A stretch of DNA of 64,000 bases from Polymyxa betae A26-41 (lineage: Eukaryota > Protista > Endomyxa: Phytomyxea): assembly GCA_003693705.1 (NCBI GenBank), contig RBZT01000404.1, positions 1 to 64,000 on the forward strand, in the 5' to 3' direction. The notes beneath the pieces are model-generated. The model was not told the origin of the DNA. It did not search any database and saw only the letters and a program-made list of their open reading frames with translations. Each line of letters begins with the position of its first letter. The stretch's first letter is position 1. The translations under genes were made by a program, and so were the position numbers. Below, one piece after another: positions 10,490 through 27,368 of this stretch.

Positions 10490-12662
10490 ATGACCAGTGA
10501 ACGACCGCCGGGGGTCCCACCGCCTCCTAATGCCAAAACCTTGGCCAGGAGCAGTAATCGTCGGAAAGGCCCCCGTCCCTATAATCTGCCCAGCATGAAG
10601 AAGAGCAATATTAGCGATTCTAACCATGTGGAAGTGATTCCATCTGGCACTACTGGTTGGGCTAAGACTCCAAAACCATCACAATCAGAAGACTCTGCGG
10701 TTTCGAATACCTGGACTGTCCCTCCTCGAGTGGCTGCAGGTAAGCCTTGTCCTCTGACCATGTGGTTTCATATTAAACTTCTATTTAGACAGGAAATTAT
10801 CAGCTTTGAAAACTGTTGAATCCAGGACAAATGAAGTTACAAAAGGACTCGATCCGAAGCCAACGCCAGCGAAGGTGCCAGAGCCTGTGCCTTCGACATC
10901 TTCGGTGATTGAGAATCCATTCGGTGTTGACATCAATGTGACATCGTGGGCTCGCGAGGTGTCTCCACCGCCTCCTGCGAAACGAGCGTGGAGCGATGCT
11001 AGCCCTATGGATTTCTCTAAGCCCGTCGTATTCGACCAGACTCCTGTTGTACCAGCCGTTAAACATGCTGGCCCACTGCTTGATAATGCATGGAGACCAG
11101 CTGTTGTTAGGAAGCCAACTGTCTCTAGCATTTTGAAGAAACCGGAATCTGAAAAACAGCTCCAGAGACTTGATTCTGAAAAACAGCCCCAGAGACCTGA
11201 TTCGGTGTCGTCAGCGACTCTAAATGATGTTGCTCAGGTTGAATCAGTCATACCTGGAGACCAACAGATACCAGCTACAGTTGTTGATGAAGCTGTTCAG
11301 ACTATGACAATGAAGCAGAAGGCTATGGAGGCCATGAAAAGACGCCAGGAAGAAGAAAGGCTCCGAGAGGAAGGGAAAAAGGCTCGATTAGCGGAGAAAC
11401 TGGCAGCATTAGAAAAAAAGAAACCTGCAGCTGCAAAACCATCGATAACATTGGCAACTATCAGTGTCATGCAACGACCTAAAAGCGCTGATGAAATGCC
11501 TGCAGCTGTTGCCGATTCGAAGTCTAGCGAACCTACTCAAAGCAATGCTGTCAAAAATTCAACGGCCGAAACAGAACCTAATTTCACGAACGTTCCTGAA
11601 CCTGCCGTCGCTGAAAATGTCCATTCTGAGAAGGGCCAGGCTGCTTTTGCCTGTACCCAGAACCATCCCGAAAATGCTCGTCGTATTTCTGATGCTCGTG
11701 AACATCTTTCCGAAACTCAGAAACACTCTTCTGATTTCAGGAAAAATCGCTCTTCTGACATGCAGGATCGTTCAGAAGATCAAAAACCGTCACGCTCAGG
11801 TCGTAATCAGCGTCGTCAGGTTCATCGACGTCATCAAGACGTACCGGGATCTAGGTCATCTAGCAACGTTTGGCATCGAAGGTCAAATAGTCGAAGCGTT
11901 GATCAAGATGATGGGCAACGTTTGTTAGAAAAAGAGACAAACGAAGGCGAGAAAATGGAACCTGCGCCTGGGCTTGATTTTCCCAGCGGTGCAATTACAG
12001 ACAGGGATGTCTCCAGAAGAGATGACAAGTCTAAGAGAGCACCTAAGATTATGGCCAGGAACCAGCCAAAACCGCCCGTGTCGCCACCGTCTACAGAAAC
12101 CGCTCCTGCTCAATCTACGGTTCCTGTCGTCACGTCTTCCAAACTTAAATCTAAGCCGATGTACAATCATCGTAAATGGCGTGCCAAGGAGCCAGTCTCA
12201 CCTTCATTACCATCACCACCGCCATCATCATCATCGCCCGTTGTTGAACAGAAGAACGACGTTGTCAATGAGAAGAAGCCGACGCCAACACTCCATCACC
12301 AGCACGGCCCTCGGCAATGGAAATCGAGGACATCTGATATTAACCAATCAAGACAATCCGATAGTTTTCCATCGTCTTCGGAAAATCAGAAGAACCTGCA
12401 CAGACGAAAGCGCTTCGGTCCCGTGTTTGAGAATTCTCCAGTGGTTGGCAGTCAAGCTGGGTCATTGATGTGGTCGGCGGCTGCACCTGTAGTTGCCACA
12501 ACACCTTCACCATTGCCTCCTCCCAGGTCATGGTCGACACCCAAGTCCAATAGCCACAACGCCGAACTCTTGAACCAGCAGCAGAGCCGAGCGAAAGGTT
12601 CACCGAGCGCAGCTCTTGCTAAACGGGCTCTAGCCGAGACGTTAGCATCACGATCGAGTTGA
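10490..12662 (+). CDS. PRRC2/BAT2-like (MOS1-like) protein with BAT2_N motif
   Basis: N-terminal RRKGPRPYNLPSMKKSN...VEVIPSGTTGWAK resembles BAT2_N (PxNLPSLK...LVPxxGTGW). It also has the PRRC2-like coiled coil AMKRRQEEERLREEGKKARLAEKLAALE and one intron near 10740-10790. Confidence 0.7.
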
Positions 12663-22721: not shown

Positions 22722-24953
22722 TTATACACTATGGTTCAATGAAAATTTATCACATCCGTCAAACAGGTGACAGAGAAATTTATGCCCATTGGTTATGTGA
22801 GTGGTTAGAACTATGTATTCCCGATCGTGATCTTCTCGCCCTGGAAGAGTCGCGTTAACACGATAAATGATGGCTCAAAGACATGTCGTTACGGCTAAGC
22901 CAGCGAAGCGCTGAGATCTCTGCGAATGTTACTCCACCAATAAAACAGACCAGCACTACTTGCTTCCTCTTTTCTTGCACGCATTCTGTTGTATGATCTG
23001 CAAATAATTTTCCAGGAAGGGCTCCTAGCGCAAAGAAATAACAAACTAGAAACTGAGAGATACGGTGCACGCTACTGACCTAACGCGTCACGAATTGGAT
23101 TTTCTGACCAACCAGGTTTCAACGATGATTCTACTATCCTAATAGATAGTGGAGCATAACCATGATAGGGAAAGTGCATCGAGGTTGGAGTCGTAGGAGC
23201 AGATGATGTCGCAGGTTCCCCTATTAGCGAGAACCCAGCGCGAACGCTGGAGTATGTTGATTTTGATTCCCTCTTCAGAACGTAAGAGAGCAATCTAAGA
23301 TGAGATTCAGAGAAAGCAGACCTTGATAAGAAGCCCAGCGTTCTCAAGATTATCAAGAGCAACTATATACTTGAATCCGTCTAAAACAGGCGTAATTCAG
23401 CGGTGGGATGCATTAAACGTTCTCGACTCACAAGTTTGAAGGATCTCTCTTCGAATGAAATCAAACGTCTTTGCTTTGAGTCCGTTACCAACGACCGACA
23501 TTAAACATGCGATACGAAGAACTTGAGTCAATGGCGCCCTTTTACCGATGAGTTCTTCAGTGTACGATTCAGTTTCGGTCATATCGGCGTTTGAGATGAG
23601 ATCCAGTTGAGCTTGTGCATTCCGAAGGAATGAAGGCAACTTCGTCACCTAATTCTGCAAGTCGATATTTTGGAGATAAAATAATAATGAAGCGTAATGT
23701 CCAGGAAAAATTGAGATTAAAGATGATTTGCATCAGCCGAGAATAAAGACCTCTGCGATACGTTCAGCAATGCTGATGTGTGTCTGCAGCGCAGCATGTT
23801 CCGGCTGTACCGATTTAAACTTCTTCATGAAAGACGACATTTGTTGAATCGATTCTGCAGAATGTCGCTCCTCATACGTCTCTTGGATATGAGTGGCACG
23901 CTTTTTCAGAATGTACTTGATGGAATGGAAATTCACATCTCGAGTCTGTTTGAAGACGTCATCGTTAGAGTTTAAAGGAATTTTGGCCATTCCAGGTCGA
24001 CCCTTTGCTCCAATAGTTTTCTTATCAACTTCAATAAATCCGTTTGAGATCCCAATGATTTCATCCATAAGGCCCTCATAATTCACTGTCAAGAAATTAT
24101 CGCGAGCAGAAGCAAAACATTGCAGCATTACGCTGCTGTAATAAAACGCTGATCAAATCGACACGACGATCTAACAATATAATCTCGCTCACTTCCGAGG
24201 CGGCATTGTCAGGAATAGGTCGTTCATTCTTCATCTTGGAAAGCAGTTGTAATGTTCTAAAGGCCCAATCGCCTTTTCCGGAAATCTAATACACCTTTAG
24301 CAAAAATTGTGGATACAGGTATGTATGGAAAGCCTGAACCTTAGGAACTTTTCCAAACAGTTCTTCAATACTATGAATGGCCGACGCGGTGTAGAACAAG
24401 GTTGACGTATCTCCATCAACCACCATCTCCTTGAAACTGTTTTCCATACATAGGCTGATAACGTCGTCATCGCAAGGAAACAGCTGCGTACAAATCAATT
24501 ATCAGAAACGCATTGAATTGAAAATACCTCAAGTTTAAGCTCAATTCTAGTGACATTTCCATAAACTTTTAGCTGAACCAATGCTGCCTCACTTAGCAGA
24601 GTACATCGTGGAACGAAACAAATATAATGGCGACGTTCAGGTCCATATTGATGAAACTGAGCAGCTAATGTCTTCAGCGCACCAATGTCAGTGGCACGAA
24701 TGATATATATGATATTTGTAGATGAAGCTGGGATCGGCGAAGGGCTTAGTTCAAACATCGAATCCACTCCATGTTGTTTCAACAACGGGACCTCGATAAG
24801 TAAACCGAGCGGGCCGGATAAATTTGGGCCCAGCACCAGCGATTTTGGTCCATCAATCTCATCGAGGATCTGGGAGAAGCGTTCAGCAGATCGCTGGCGA
24901 ATCTGAATTAATGGAATGCAGGCGTTTCGAAGATGGCATGTCCCAGAAGACAT
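22722..24953 (-). CDS. VPS33: Sec1/Munc18 family protein Vps33
   Basis: GPKSLVL...LSGPLGLL..LLKQHGV; LFPCDDDVISL; NYEGLMDEIIGISNG; LNSNDDVFKQTRDVNF; YHGYAPLSIRIVE; LVCFIGGVTFAEISALRWL. Multi-exon. Confidence 0.92.
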
Positions 24954-25209: not shown

Positions 25210-27368
25210 TTACAATTCGTCATCCAGACGGGCTTCGCGGTCAGCCTCACGTTCAGCCGCCCGAATTCTTTCAACGTCAATCTTTCGGTATTTGGCTGCT
25301 TCCTCCTGCATGGATTTGATTTCTTCGGAGCTTAAGCGGCCGGTGTCGTGTTGAACTTCAACATTGGCCTTGGCGCCAGAGATCTTGTCGTGGGCAGTAA
25401 CGGTTAGGAGACCGTTGGCATTCAAATCGAAGCAGACATCGATTTTAGGAACACCCTTCTTGGCTTTCTGGATGCCGTTGATGGTGAATTCACCAAGCAG
25501 GTGGTTACCATCAGTAAATCCACGCTCGCCTTCAAAGATACGAATGTCGACACTGGTTTGGTAATCTTCAACGGTGGTGAACTCGTGGGACTTTCGGCAA
25601 GGAATGGAGGTGTTACGAGGAACGACAACAGCGAAGACACCGTTCTGGCACTCAATACCAAGAGACAGAGGGACGACATCAACCAGAAGCAGATTGTCAG
25701 TAGCAGAGCTACGCATTCCAGAGAGGATAGCACCCTGGATAGCAGCACCGATAGCAACAGCCTCATCAGGGTTAACAGACTTGCAGAGAACCTTGCCACC
25801 AAAGTATTCGGAGAGGATCTGCTGAACACGAGGAATACGGGTGGAACCACCGACCAGAACGATTTCATCAACTTCAGATCGCTCACACTTGGCATCACGA
25901 AGGACGCGCTCGACGGAGACCATGCAGCGCTGGAAAGTCTTATCACAGACCTCCTCGAGAGTAGCACGGCTCAGAGGGATAGAGATCTCCTCCTCACCCT
26001 CGACGGATACCTCCACGACGGTCGATTGACGAGAAGACAGCTCTCGTTTGGCAGTCTCACAAGCAGAACGAAGCTTGCGGATAGCCTTGTCGTTGCCCTT
26101 AAAGATATCCTTGCCGCGTTCTTTGGCGACCTTGCTCTGGACCCATTCGCTGAGCTCCGTGTCGAAATCTTCACCACCAAGGTGGGTATCACCAGCAGTA
26201 GCCTTCACCTCGAAGACACCATTGTGGATATGAAGCAATGAAACATCTAAAACATCATCTTAGGTAATATAGTGCTTGGAAGATGACGGGCCTTACCGAA
26301 AGTACCACCACCCAGATCGAAGACGAGAACGTTGGTTGCAGGAACTTCTTCAACTTCTTCAGAAAGAGAGTTCTTGGCCTTGATATCAAGACCGTAAGCC
26401 AAGGCGGCGGCGGTAGGTTCATTGATAATACGAAGAACGTCAAGACCAGCAATGGCACCGGCATCCTTGGTAAGACGACGCTGAGCATCATTGAAGTAAG
26501 CAGGAACGGTAATGACAGCCTTCTTGACGGGTCGGCCAAGAGCAGCTTCAGCTGTTTGCTTCATCTCTTCAAGAACCATAGCCGAGATCTGTTCAGCCTG
26601 GAACTGACGGTTGTCGACTTCGATGACAGGGCGACCGTTGGAAGCATGTTCGGTGACCTTGAAAGGCATGGACTTGATCTCGTCCAGACATTCATGGTAT
26701 TGCTGACCAATGATACGCTTAATGTTGAAGAGAGTTCGCTGAGTGTTTCCAGCAGCCTGGCGCTTGGCGCTGTCACCAACAACACGGCGACCATCTTCAG
26801 TAAAAGCAACCCAAGAAGGGGTGGTCAGGTTGCCATTAGCATTGGGCAGAACGTGAGCCTTGCCATCTTTCCAGACAGCAACACAGGAGAAGGTGGTACC
26901 CAGATCGATACCGATGACGGGCTCGTTGGCGAGTTCATGCTTGCTGATGGCGTCCTGAACTTGCTCGAGGCTGTCGAGAAGCTGGCGGCTTTCTCTGTCG
27001 TGTTCCAGACCCGATTCATAGGCAGTCTTGGCGTCATACAAACGGTCAAGCTTGAAAAGGGCATAGCCAAGACGGAGCCAGGCTTTAGACCAGGTCGGGT
27101 CCAGATCCACAGCAGCCTGAGCATCAGCAGCAGCTTCATCGAATTTGGACAAAGAAGCATAAGCAGCAGATCGGTTCGAGAAGAAGACCTTGTCTGTAGA
27201 GTCGGCTTTGATCGCCTGAGAAAAGTGATGGACAGCGCCTCGGAAATCGCCCTTTGAGAAGGCTTCATTTCCCTTGGCCTTGGCCTTGGCAGCCCATACT
27301 TTAGCCTCTGGAGTACCAGCTTCAGGCATCAGGTTCAGATCACGCATTGATTGGTGCAGATTCGACAT
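25210..27368 (-). CDS. TPR (HOP/STI1-like)-Hsp70 fusion protein, ~702 aa, with truncated lid and C-terminus LDDEL
   Basis: Three TPRs (AKAKGNEAF...FFSNRSAAY...WSKAWLRLG) are in the same exon as Hsp70 [24 protein letters not shown] and [11 protein letters not shown] single intron 26247-26296 restores DLGGGTF|DVS, followed by [19 protein letters not shown] and the linker [12 protein letters not shown]. Exons of 1072+1037 nt give 703 codons. Confidence 0.93.

What the first reader, a model, noticed from the sequence alone, without database searches (positions are those of the whole stretch)
25210..27368. HOP-type TPR domain fused in cis to an Hsp70: a candidate self-docking chaperone
Seen: a three-repeat TPR domain and the Hsp70 ATPase domain lie in one uninterrupted exon, so the fusion is not an artefact of splice prediction. 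All five carboxylate-clamp positions of HOP TPR1 (K8, N12, N43, K73, R77) align with AKAKGN, FSNRS and WSKAWLR. The Hsp70 nucleotide motifs and the hydrophobic linker are intact. Established: such clamps bind the C-terminal EEVD of Hsp70/Hsp90 and normally sit on separate co-chaperones (HOP, CHIP, SGTA). Inference: this Hsp70 could dock directly on Hsp90 or canonical Hsp70 tails, merging the Hsp70-HOP hand-over step into one polypeptide. I do not know a characterised protein with this architecture.
Basis: partly seen in the sequence, partly recalled or inferred. Interest (0 to 1): 0.85.

Follow-up and report, generated by a model that had tools for sequence, protein, structure and literature searches.

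The report
Hsp70 with built-in HOP-like TPR clamp
This is a real gene for an Hsp70 chaperone that carries, at its front end, the kind of small docking domain that normally sits on separate helper proteins and grips the tails of other chaperones; it is not unique but belongs to a widespread protist and algal family that I could not find described in the literature.

Summary
On the minus strand, 27368-25210 encodes a 702-aa protein in two exons split by one 50-nt GT..AG intron. Exon 1 is one open frame. It holds a three-repeat TPR domain plus capping helix, then the first 207 residues of the Hsp70 ATPase domain.

The TPR aligns without gaps to human HOP TPR1. All five carboxylate-clamp residues are present. 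Its model superposes on the HOP TPR1-Hsc70 peptide complex at 0.9 A.

The Hsp70 part keeps its nucleotide motifs, linker and beta substrate domain. It stops after about one lid helix, has no EEVD and ends in RLDDEL.

The gene is not a one-off. At least 39 non-redundant proteins share the layout, from green algae, oomycetes, Euglena and unnamed MMETSP and metagenome sequences; an Atlas cluster adds diatoms. They form one well-supported Hsp70 clade apart from cytosolic Hsp70 and BiP. The clamp is kept in 93-100% of them.

The same genome, probably a plasmodiophorid, has a separate HOP, two Hsp70s ending in EEVD and an Hsp90 ending in MEDVD. The fusion therefore adds to HOP and does not replace it.

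Docking on EEVD tails, most likely those of Hsp70, is the best-supported mechanism, but it is untested. I found no paper describing this family. No RNA evidence could be obtained.

The parts
25210..27368 (-). Whole TPR-Hsp70 gene from ATG to TAA: 702 codons in two exons
26297..27368 (-). Exon 1: 357 codons plus the first base of the split Asp codon. It holds the TPR domain and Hsp70 ATPase residues 151-357 in one open frame.
26928..27311 (-). TPR domain, residues 20-147: seven helices, that is three TPR motifs plus a capping helix, of the HOP TPR1 type
   Evidence: Pfam. PDB sequence search: 1ELW at E=7.9e-21. AF2 model pLDDT 94.4. Foldseek to 1ELW: rmsd 0.9 A, TM 0.94.
27072..27281 (-). Span that holds the five carboxylate-clamp codons: K30 (27281-27279), N34 (27269-27267), N65 (27176-27174), K95 (27086-27084), R99 (27074-27072)
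   Evidence: Gapless alignment to HOP TPR1. Kept in 37-40 of 40 non-redundant rows, the window included. Codon coordinates.
26916..26927 (-). Very short junction (NEP-V) between the capping helix and the first strand of the ATPase domain (VIGIDLGTT)
   Evidence: The linker varies from about 5 to more than 80 residues in relatives.
26247..26296 (-). The only intron: 50 nt, GT..AG, phase 1, in the Asp codon after DLGGGTF
   Evidence: The same position and phase occur in two other Hsp70 paralogues of the genome.
25210..26246 (-). Exon 2: rest of the ATPase domain, interdomain linker (25692-25651), beta substrate-binding domain, one C-terminal helix, and the stop codon
   Evidence: Pfam HSP70 profile positions 200-536 of 599. 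50% identity to the genome's own cytosolic Hsp70 up to its residue 538 of 657.
25213..25341 (-). Truncated lid and tail, from GRLSSEEI to RLDDEL. Only lid helix A and part of helix B remain. There is no helical bundle, no Gly/Pro-rich tail and no EEVD.
   Evidence: In the AF2 model of homologue P0008 this region is a single helix, 652-681.

Best explanation
The locus is an intact nuclear gene for a cytosolic Hsp70 of a distinct, conserved subfamily. Its members carry an N-terminal HOP-TPR1-like carboxylate-clamp TPR domain. In the window's subclade they have also lost most of the helical lid and the EEVD tail.

Shown here:
- the gene structure;
- the domain make-up;
- the complete clamp;
- intact ATPase, linker and beta-domain motifs;
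- membership of a single Hsp70 clade in which the clamp is almost invariant;
- the co-existence in this genome of a separate HOP, two cytosolic Hsp70s ending in IEEVD and VEEVD, and an Hsp90 ending in MEDVD.

Inferred: the TPR grips the C-terminal EEVD tail of another chaperone. The canonical cytosolic Hsp70 is the most likely partner and Hsp90 a possible one. This would tether an ATP-driven, lid-less and therefore fast-exchanging Hsp70 module next to a canonical chaperone. Clients could then pass between the two without a bridging co-chaperone.

The fusion protein has no EEVD of its own. It can dock on other chaperones but cannot be gripped by HOP, CHIP or class B J-proteins. The relationship is therefore one-directional.
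For: - Gene model and open frame.
- Pfam TPR plus HSP70 in one exon.
- Gapless alignment to HOP TPR1 with all five clamp residues.
- Window TPR model at pLDDT 94.4. Every top natural Foldseek hit is a clamp-type TPR domain of a co-chaperone family that binds Hsp70 or Hsp90 tails, several solved with the peptide: 1ELW at rmsd 0.9 A, SGT 2VYI, Sgt2-Ssa1 peptide 5LYN, RPAP3-Hsp90 peptide 4CGV.
- At least 39 non-redundant proteins with the same TPR-then-Hsp70 order. Named sources are Mesostigma, Ostreococcus, Euglena mutabilis, Saprolegnia and Bremia, plus an unnamed MMETSP transcript. The Atlas adds a diatom cluster.
- Clamp residues are kept in 93-100% of 40 rows. The mean top-residue frequency over the domain is 0.56.
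- Careful ML tree: all 19 fusion rows and both window exon rows fall in one clade with support 100/99. The own cytosolic Hsp70 rows lie outside it, and so do the BiP clade and both exon fragments of the own BiP.
- The window TPR scores best against TPR1 in four HOPs: 110/39/77, 80/45/74 and 111/37/57 bits for TPR1/2A/2B, and 74.6/37.1/59.7 for human HOP.
- Candidate ligands in the same genome: Hsp70 ending PKIEEVD, Hsp70 ending KVEEVD, Hsp90 ending MEDVD.
- A separate HOP at C482.
- No in-frame Met between residues 14 and 234.
- Relatives assembled from transcriptomes (MMETSP P0028, Euglena Trinity P0169) carry both domains on one transcript.
Against: - There is no binding data of any kind.
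- There is no RNA evidence for this genome.
- The TPR-only tree is unresolved between fused TPRs and HOP TPR1, so ligand specificity rests on similarity scores.
- A few members of the clade lack the TPR (P0290, P0058, P0062, P0042), so the Hsp70 module can do without it.
- No orthologue at high identity was found, although Hsp90 of close relatives (95%) is in the same database. The gene may therefore be weakly expressed or lineage-restricted among plasmodiophorids.
- No three-unit heat-shock element lies within ~1.1 kb upstream.
Confidence: 0.6

Rival explanations
1. The TPR clamp binds the acidic C-terminal tail of the same protein or of another copy. This would give auto-inhibition or head-to-tail oligomers, that is true 'self-docking', and not docking on canonical chaperones.
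For: Tails of the short-lid subclade are acidic: RLDDEL here, and GDEDDM, EYEGTD, REVEE, YVDEE, LEAED in relatives. EYEGTD is identical in two Mamiellophyceae-type clusters that are less than 90% identical to each other.
Against: The last residue is not conserved (L, M, D, A, E, Y, H) and there is no family-wide motif. Mesostigma ends in AQTKH, and oomycete members have a long non-acidic lid end. In the AF2 model of P0008 the tail is the end of one continuous helix with low confidence, not an extended peptide. Coordinates could not be inspected.
Confidence: 0.1
2. The TPR recognises some other ligand with an acidic C-terminus, or serves as a localisation module at a membrane or organelle, and the Hsp70 acts there. 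EEVD tails are not the physiological partner.
For: Carboxylate-clamp TPRs also occur on receptors and enzymes: Tom70, OM64/Toc64, Sec72, PP5 and SGT all appear among the structural and sequence hits.
Against: All of those known clamps still bind Hsp70 or Hsp90 tails. The window TPR is 46-53% identical to HOP TPR1 domains, closer than to many TPRs of its own family. No transmembrane or targeting segment is visible in the N-terminal residues.
Confidence: 0.15
3. It is an ER-lumenal, BiP-like Hsp70 retained through its C-terminal DDEL.
For: The protein ends in LDDEL, which resembles the H/K/DDEL retrieval signals.
Against: - The N-terminus has no hydrophobic signal peptide, and no in-frame ATG lies upstream.
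- The genome's BiP is a different gene (C720) that ends in HDEL.
- The protein lies outside the BiP clade.
- Among complete relatives none shares the ending. One 603-aa model that breaks off inside the beta domain (P0030) ends HDDEL.
Confidence: 0.02
4. It is an artefact: two adjacent genes read as one, a pseudogene, or an assembly chimera.
For: No transcript evidence could be obtained for this genome.
Against: - One open frame spans the junction, with no stop and only four residues between the capping helix and the first strand of the ATPase domain.
- The same junction occurs in dozens of independent genomes and transcriptomes.
- All functional motifs are intact.
- GC3 is uniform across the TPR and Hsp70 parts, 0.51-0.55.
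- The intron sits at a position shared with other Hsp70 genes of this genome.
Confidence: 0.02

Closest known systems
HOP/STI1 TPR1 domain (human HOP, PDB 1ELW; the genome's own HOP at contig C482)
   Same: - Three TPR motifs plus a capping helix.
- All five two-carboxylate-clamp residues.
- 39-53% sequence identity.
- rmsd 0.9 A to the Hsc70-peptide complex.
   Different: HOP is a stand-alone adaptor of the form TPR1-DP1-TPR2A-TPR2B-DP2 with no ATPase. Here a single TPR is fused directly to an Hsp70, and no DP domain is present.
Canonical eukaryotic cytosolic Hsp70 (HSPA8/Ssa type; own copy on contig C690)
   Same: ATPase motifs, hydrophobic linker and beta substrate-binding domain. 50% identity over exon 2.
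   Different: - It has an N-terminal TPR.
- It lacks about 100 C-terminal residues: the rest of lid helix B, the helical bundle, the Gly/Pro-rich tail and EEVD.
- It forms a separate clade with 100/99 support.
Leishmania HRP4 (LmjF.29.1240), an Hsp70-related protein with a TPR domain (Drini et al. 2016, PMC4943205)
   Same: The only published Hsp70-family protein with an in-cis TPR that my searches turned up. Its authors also proposed interaction with Hsp70 or Hsp90.
   Different: HRP4 has a divergent ATPase domain only, and its TPR is C-terminal and of the TPR_12 type. The protein here has a full ATPase-linker-beta-domain module with an N-terminal HOP-TPR1-type clamp. The two arrangements are most simply read as independent inventions.
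Truncated cytosolic Hsp70s of plants and green algae (Hsp70T, lineages T1 and T2; Chen et al. 2023, PMC10687569)
   Same: Cytosolic-type Hsp70s that lack the C-terminal EEVD and part of the lid. That survey included green algae.
   Different: The paper mentions TPR only twice and neither passage was among those shown, so as far as seen it describes no TPR fusion. Whether its algal 'type II T1' genes include TPR-Hsp70 members was not tested.
Bacterial Hsp70-plus-TPR proteins (ESM Atlas clusters from Thermodesulfobacteriota, Bacteroidota and others)
   Same: The Pfam combination HSP70 + TPR.
   Different: These are bacterial DnaK-like proteins of about 650-800 aa with other TPR types (TPR_8, TPR_12). 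They were not examined further and are probably independent fusions.

Membership tests
Hsp70 (PF00012) | Actin-like ATPase domain with phosphate-1 loop (GIDLGTT), catalytic Lys (DAKR-type position), [16 protein letters not shown] and [11 protein letters not shown] | tested here: met
   Pfam E=6e-82 for exon 1 and 1e-111 for exon 2. The motifs were read directly.
Hsp70 (PF00012) | Hydrophobic interdomain linker followed by a beta-sandwich substrate-binding domain | tested here: met
   [14 protein letters not shown] at 25692-25651. The alignment to the own cytosolic Hsp70 is continuous through the beta domain.
Hsp70 (PF00012) | Complete alpha-helical lid (helices A-E) | tested here: not met
   The profile match ends at position 536 of 599. 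The protein ends about 19 residues after the point that aligns with residue 538 of the 657-aa canonical copy. Homologue P0008 models a single terminal helix.
Canonical cytosolic Hsp70 (Ssa/HSPA8 type) | C-terminal EEVD motif | tested here: not met
   It ends in RLDDEL. The genome's own canonical copies end in IEEVD and VEEVD.
Carboxylate-clamp TPR domain (HOP TPR1 type) | Three TPR motifs plus a capping helix | tested here: met
   Seven helices in the AF2 model at pLDDT 94.4. TM 0.94 and rmsd 0.9 A to 1ELW.
Carboxylate-clamp TPR domain (HOP TPR1 type) | Five clamp residues equivalent to HOP K8, N12, N43, K73, R77 | tested here: met
   K30, N34, N65, K95, R99 by gapless alignment. They are 93-100% conserved in the family.
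Carboxylate-clamp TPR domain (HOP TPR1 type) | Binds a C-terminal EEVD peptide | not testable with these tools
   This needs ITC or fluorescence polarisation, or a peptide co-fold. Only single-chain prediction was available.
HOP/STI1 | TPR1-DP1-TPR2A-TPR2B-DP2 architecture | tested here: not met
   There is a single TPR and no STI1/DP match in the gene. The genome's true HOP is elsewhere, at C482:45.9-47.8 kb.
BiP / ER-lumenal Hsp70 | N-terminal signal peptide plus H/KDEL, and placement in the BiP clade | tested here: not met
   No hydrophobic N-terminus. The protein lies outside the BiP clade. The own BiP, ending in HDEL, is at C720. Only the DDEL-like ending fits.
TPR-Hsp70 subfamily (unnamed; e.g. 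O. tauri OUS48600.1, S. diclina SDRG_05778) | N-terminal clamp TPR followed by an Hsp70 of one specific clade | tested here: met
   43-61% identity over both domains. Both window exon rows fall inside the clade with 100/99 support, next to Mesostigma.
Leishmania HRP4 type | Divergent Hsp70 ATPase domain only, with a C-terminal TPR_12 | tested here: not met
   Domain order and content differ (against PMC4943205).

The most novel reading that the evidence does not exclude
TPR-Hsp70 is an unrecognised, ancient class of cytosolic Hsp70. It is spread across Rhizaria, stramenopiles, green algae and euglenids, and no animal, fungal or land-plant member appeared among the hits. In this reading it docks through a HOP-TPR1-like clamp on the EEVD tail of canonical Hsp70, and perhaps Hsp90. 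The result is a hard-wired two-Hsp70 relay in which a lid-less, fast-exchanging module works beside a canonical one, a mode of chaperone cooperation not described so far.
Probability: 0.35. Interest if true: 0.75.

Novelty: new variant of a known kind. Interest (0 to 1): 0.55.

Why it matters
Hsp70 networks are usually described as Hsp70 plus separate TPR co-chaperones (HOP, CHIP, SGT and others) that read the EEVD tail.

This is a conserved Hsp70 that itself carries such a reader, has lost its own EEVD and has lost most of its lid. That points to direct, directional Hsp70-to-Hsp70 (or Hsp90) coupling. It would add a new node to the chaperone network of many protists and algae.

No animal, fungal or land-plant member turned up, which may explain why the family has gone unstudied. 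Ostreococcus, diatoms and oomycetes are hosts in which gene disruption or tagging should be feasible (my own knowledge, not tested here). The clamp-peptide interaction can be tested with simple biophysics.

For this genome, probably a plasmodiophorid, the gene is simply part of the proteostasis machinery.

Tried and rejected

2. Close relatives in metagenome contigs. Only ordinary Hsp70 loci came back.

3. Literature. The other seven found no description of an N-terminal-TPR Hsp70. My recollection that trypanosomatid 'HSP70.a' carries a TPR was wrong: the TPR-bearing protein is HRP4, with a different layout.

4. ER retention through DDEL. Rejected, because there is no signal peptide, BiP is a separate gene ending in HDEL, and no complete relative shares the ending.

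5. Cis-docking of the tail. The AF2 model of homologue P0008 gives a terminal helix of low confidence. Model coordinates are not exposed, so contacts could not be measured and the question stays open.

6. TPR-only phylogeny. Fused TPRs, HOP TPR1 and HOP TPR2B separate from TPR2A at 100/100, but fused TPRs and TPR1 form an unresolved comb. Origin from HOP TPR1 is plausible, not shown.

7. Heat-shock elements. None within ~1.1 kb upstream at one mismatch or fewer.

8. Bacterial promoter and terminator scan. Irrelevant for a eukaryotic gene.

All searches, alignments and trees used the two exon translations separately, and whole-protein folding used homologue P0008.
Full report
**What is in the sequence**

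The finding's coordinates match a minus-strand gene. The ATG is at 27368 and the TAA at 25212-25210.

Exon 1 (27368-26297) is an uninterrupted open frame of 357 codons. A 50-nt intron (26296-26247, GTAAG...TTTAG) splits the Asp codon that follows DLGGGTF. Exon 2 (26246-25210) completes a 702-residue protein.

Every search, alignment and tree used the references window:26298-27368:- and window:25213-26244:- separately. The joined-protein step is left out.

Pfam results:
- Exon 1: TPR_1, TPR_2 and related models at residues 28-131, and HSP70 at residues 151-357 (profile positions 1-198, E=6e-82).
- Exon 2: HSP70 profile positions 200-536 of 599 (E=1e-111).

The TPR and the start of the ATPase domain therefore share one exon. 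Only four residues (NEP-V) separate the capping helix from the first strand of the ATPase domain.

In-frame Met codons in exon 1 occur only at residues 1, 8, 14, 234, 264 and 269. No in-frame ATG lies upstream. A TPR-less but complete Hsp70 cannot be made from this exon.

**The TPR domain**

A phmmer search of solved structures aligns residues 29-146 without a gap to residues 7-124 of human HOP, which is TPR1 (74.6 bits). TPR2B scores 59.7 bits and TPR2A 37.1. 1ELW matches at E=7.9e-21, followed by SGT/Sgt2, RPAP3 and SPAG1.

The offset of 22 places K30, N34, N65, K95 and R99 on HOP K8, N12, N43, K73 and R77.

An AF2 model of residues 1-150 has pLDDT 94.4 and seven helices. It superposes on the HOP TPR1-Hsc70 peptide complex at rmsd 0.9 A over 114 columns (TM 0.94). 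Every top natural hit is a clamp-type TPR domain of a co-chaperone family that binds Hsp70 or Hsp90 tails, several of them solved with the peptide.

In three HOP-like proteins recovered by the searches, the window TPR always scores best on TPR1: 110/39/77, 80/45/74 and 111/37/57 bits for TPR1/2A/2B.

**The Hsp70 part**

GIDLGTT, the catalytic Lys in [34 protein letters not shown] and the linker [14 protein letters not shown] are all present.

Exon 2 is 50% identical to the genome's own canonical cytosolic Hsp70, up to residue 538 of its 657 residues. The protein ends 19 residues later in RLDDEL. It lacks most of lid helix B, the helical bundle, the Gly/Pro-rich tail and EEVD.

I folded a full-length homologue (P0008, the cluster that contains Ostreococcus tauri OUS48600.1) with a 36-row family alignment. 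The model has pLDDT 85.9. It shows a seven-helix TPR, a disordered linker, the ATPase domain, the beta domain and one terminal helix.

**It is a family, not a one-off**

A word-indexed search with the 404-aa ORF found proteins of about 600-706 aa carrying TPR plus HSP70 Pfam domains at 43-61% identity. Named members:
- Mesostigma viride
- Saprolegnia diclina (SDRG_05778)
- Bremia lactucae
- an MMETSP transcript, whose organism is not given

Cluster look-ups added Ostreococcus tauri, annotated only as 'heat shock protein 70, cytosolic', and Euglena mutabilis Trinity transcripts.

The exhaustive HMMER search of 1.84 billion representatives added many more 50%-identity clusters with the same domain order. 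The ESM Atlas lists a Chlorophyta cluster and a diatom cluster. It also lists several bacterial Hsp70+TPR clusters that are probably independent inventions.

Among 40 non-redundant TPRs, the window's included, the clamp positions read K 39/40, N 37/40, N 39/40, K 38/40 and R 40/40. The mean top-residue frequency across the domain is 0.56.

A careful ML tree of the Hsp70 parts (65 rows, LG+C20) puts all 19 fusion rows and both window exon rows in one clade with support 100/99. Both cytosolic Hsp70 rows from this genome lie outside it. So do the BiP clade and both exon fragments of the own BiP; the N-terminal BiP fragment did not join the BiP clade. The window rows sit next to Mesostigma.

Eleven rows in that clade were scored 'non-fusion':
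- Five are N-terminally truncated gene models: four near-identical to a fusion row or beginning within the TPR or linker, and one fragment that starts inside the ATPase domain.
- Four seem to lack the TPR genuinely: P0290, P0058, P0062 and P0042.
- For P0056, which begins with a non-Met residue, the N-terminus is too short to tell.

The short lid is shared by the window's subclade. Oomycete members keep a longer lid, and none of the complete members aligned here ends in EEVD.

**Genomic context**

The assembly is 27.1 Mb in 1001 contigs. Its Hsp90 is 88% identical to that of Plasmodiophora brassicae. The organism is probably a plasmodiophorid (Phytomyxea, Rhizaria); this is an inference from one protein.

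The genome also contains:
- a cytosolic Hsp70 ending in PKIEEVD (C690);
- another ending in KVEEVD (C912);
- a BiP ending in HDEL (C720);
- a mitochondrial Hsp70 (C482);
- an Hsp90 ending in MEDVD;
- a separate HOP/STI1 with DP domains at C482:45.9-47.8 kb, whose TPR1 is the closest paralogue of the fused TPR (46-49% identity).

Only one TPR-Hsp70 locus exists. The downstream neighbour is a Sec1-family gene.

GC3 of the gene is 0.51-0.55 and is uniform across the TPR and Hsp70 parts. It lies between the neighbour's 0.37-0.44 and the 0.65-0.71 of Hsp70 and Hsp90. No three-unit heat-shock element lies within ~1.1 kb upstream.

**How it most likely works**

Shown: an intact Hsp70 engine with a complete, strongly conserved EEVD-type clamp at its N-terminus, no EEVD of its own, and a minimal lid. 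Suitable ligands and a separate HOP exist in the same cell.

Inferred, from established knowledge of HOP TPR1, SGT and RPAP3 clamps: the TPR grips the C-terminal EEVD of another chaperone. Similarity favours the Hsp70 tail (TPR1- and TPR2B-like) over the Hsp90 tail (TPR2A-like).

This would tether a lid-less Hsp70 beside a canonical Hsp70 or Hsp90 for direct client transfer. In DnaK and Hsp70 lid-deletion studies, lid-less forms exchange substrate quickly. The relationship would be one-way, because HOP, CHIP and class B J-proteins cannot grip the fusion protein.

I put this at about 0.6.

Rivals:
- Binding of its own acidic tail. The tails are acidic but not conserved, and AF2 gives no docked peptide.
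- Another acidic C-terminal ligand, or a localisation role.
- ER retention through DDEL. There is no signal peptide, and the protein is not in the BiP clade.
- Artefact. The open frame and dozens of independent homologues contradict this.

**Comparison with what is known**

The protein is a member of Hsp70 by every sequence criterion except the complete lid and the EEVD. Its N-terminal domain meets the sequence and fold criteria of a carboxylate-clamp TPR. It is not a HOP, having no DP domains and only one TPR.

The only published Hsp70-TPR fusion I found is Leishmania HRP4, which has a divergent ATPase domain only and a C-terminal TPR_12 (PMC4943205). That is a different arrangement.

A survey of truncated cytosolic Hsp70s in plants and green algae mentions TPR only twice, and neither passage was among those shown, so as far as seen it describes no TPR fusion (PMC10687569).

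Seven completed full-text searches found no description of this family. The searchable library is incomplete, so a description may still exist.

**Verdict**

The gene is a new member of a widespread TPR-Hsp70 subfamily that is present in databases but, as far as I could find, uncharacterised. As a kind of system it is a new variant of known parts.

Interest is moderate to good at 0.55. It is not a unique invention and nothing was tested biochemically. The conserved clamp, the lost EEVD and the lost lid nevertheless make a clear and cheaply testable hypothesis about direct Hsp70-Hsp70 coupling.

**Not obtained**

- Close orthologues.
- Model coordinates for contact analysis.

Noticed in passing
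window 26247-26296; L005 about 2085-2126 (G000:C912); L012 about 2196-2239 (G000:C482): Three deeply diverged Hsp70 paralogues of this genome (TPR-Hsp70, a cytosolic Hsp70 and the mitochondrial Hsp70) have a short intron at exactly the same position and phase, G|GT..AG|AT inside the Asp codon after DLGGGTF. BiP (C720) and the intronless cytosolic copy (C690) do not. This may reflect parallel gain at a proto-splice site, or something else.
   Followed up: partly
window 26928-27311 compared with P0293:1-125, P0209:1-125 and L019:1489-1773: The fused TPR is 46-53% identical to three of the four HOP TPR1 domains compared, including the genome's own HOP (the fourth is 39%). It is only 33-46% identical to the TPRs of other TPR-Hsp70 family members. 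This suggests a shared ligand constraint or past exchange with HOP.
   Followed up: partly
G000 as a whole; L013 (G000:C877): The genome's Hsp90 is 88% identical to that of Plasmodiophora brassicae and 95% identical to unnamed metatranscriptome proteins. The 27-Mb assembly is probably a plasmodiophorid. Its Hsp90 ends in MEDVD, not MEEVD.
   Followed up: partly
L019/L024 (G000:C482:45.9-47.8 kb): A canonical HOP/STI1 gene (TPR1, DP, further TPRs, second DP) lies about 20 kb from the mitochondrial Hsp70 gene on the same contig.
   Followed up: no
ESM Atlas clusters: Several bacterial clusters (Thermodesulfobacteriota, Bacteroidota, Pseudomonadota, Actinomycetota) combine HSP70 with TPR_8 or TPR_12 repeats in proteins of about 650-800 aa. 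Hsp70-TPR fusions seem to have arisen repeatedly.
   Followed up: no
window 11583-11605: A run of overlapping perfect heat-shock-element-like units (GAAnnTTCnnGAA on both strands) lies inside a 618-aa ORF (10806-12662, +). It is probably coding sequence and was not examined.
   Followed up: no
P0184, P0191, P0200, P0208: Proteins of about 1000-1200 aa from the representative library that appear to hold two Hsp70 ATPase domains in tandem, that is Hsp70-Hsp70 fusions. They form a long-branched clade within the cytosolic Hsp70 group.
   Followed up: no
window 23733-24953 (-): The downstream neighbour is a multi-exon Sec1-family (SM protein) gene with lower GC3 (0.37-0.44) than the chaperone gene.
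   Followed up: partly
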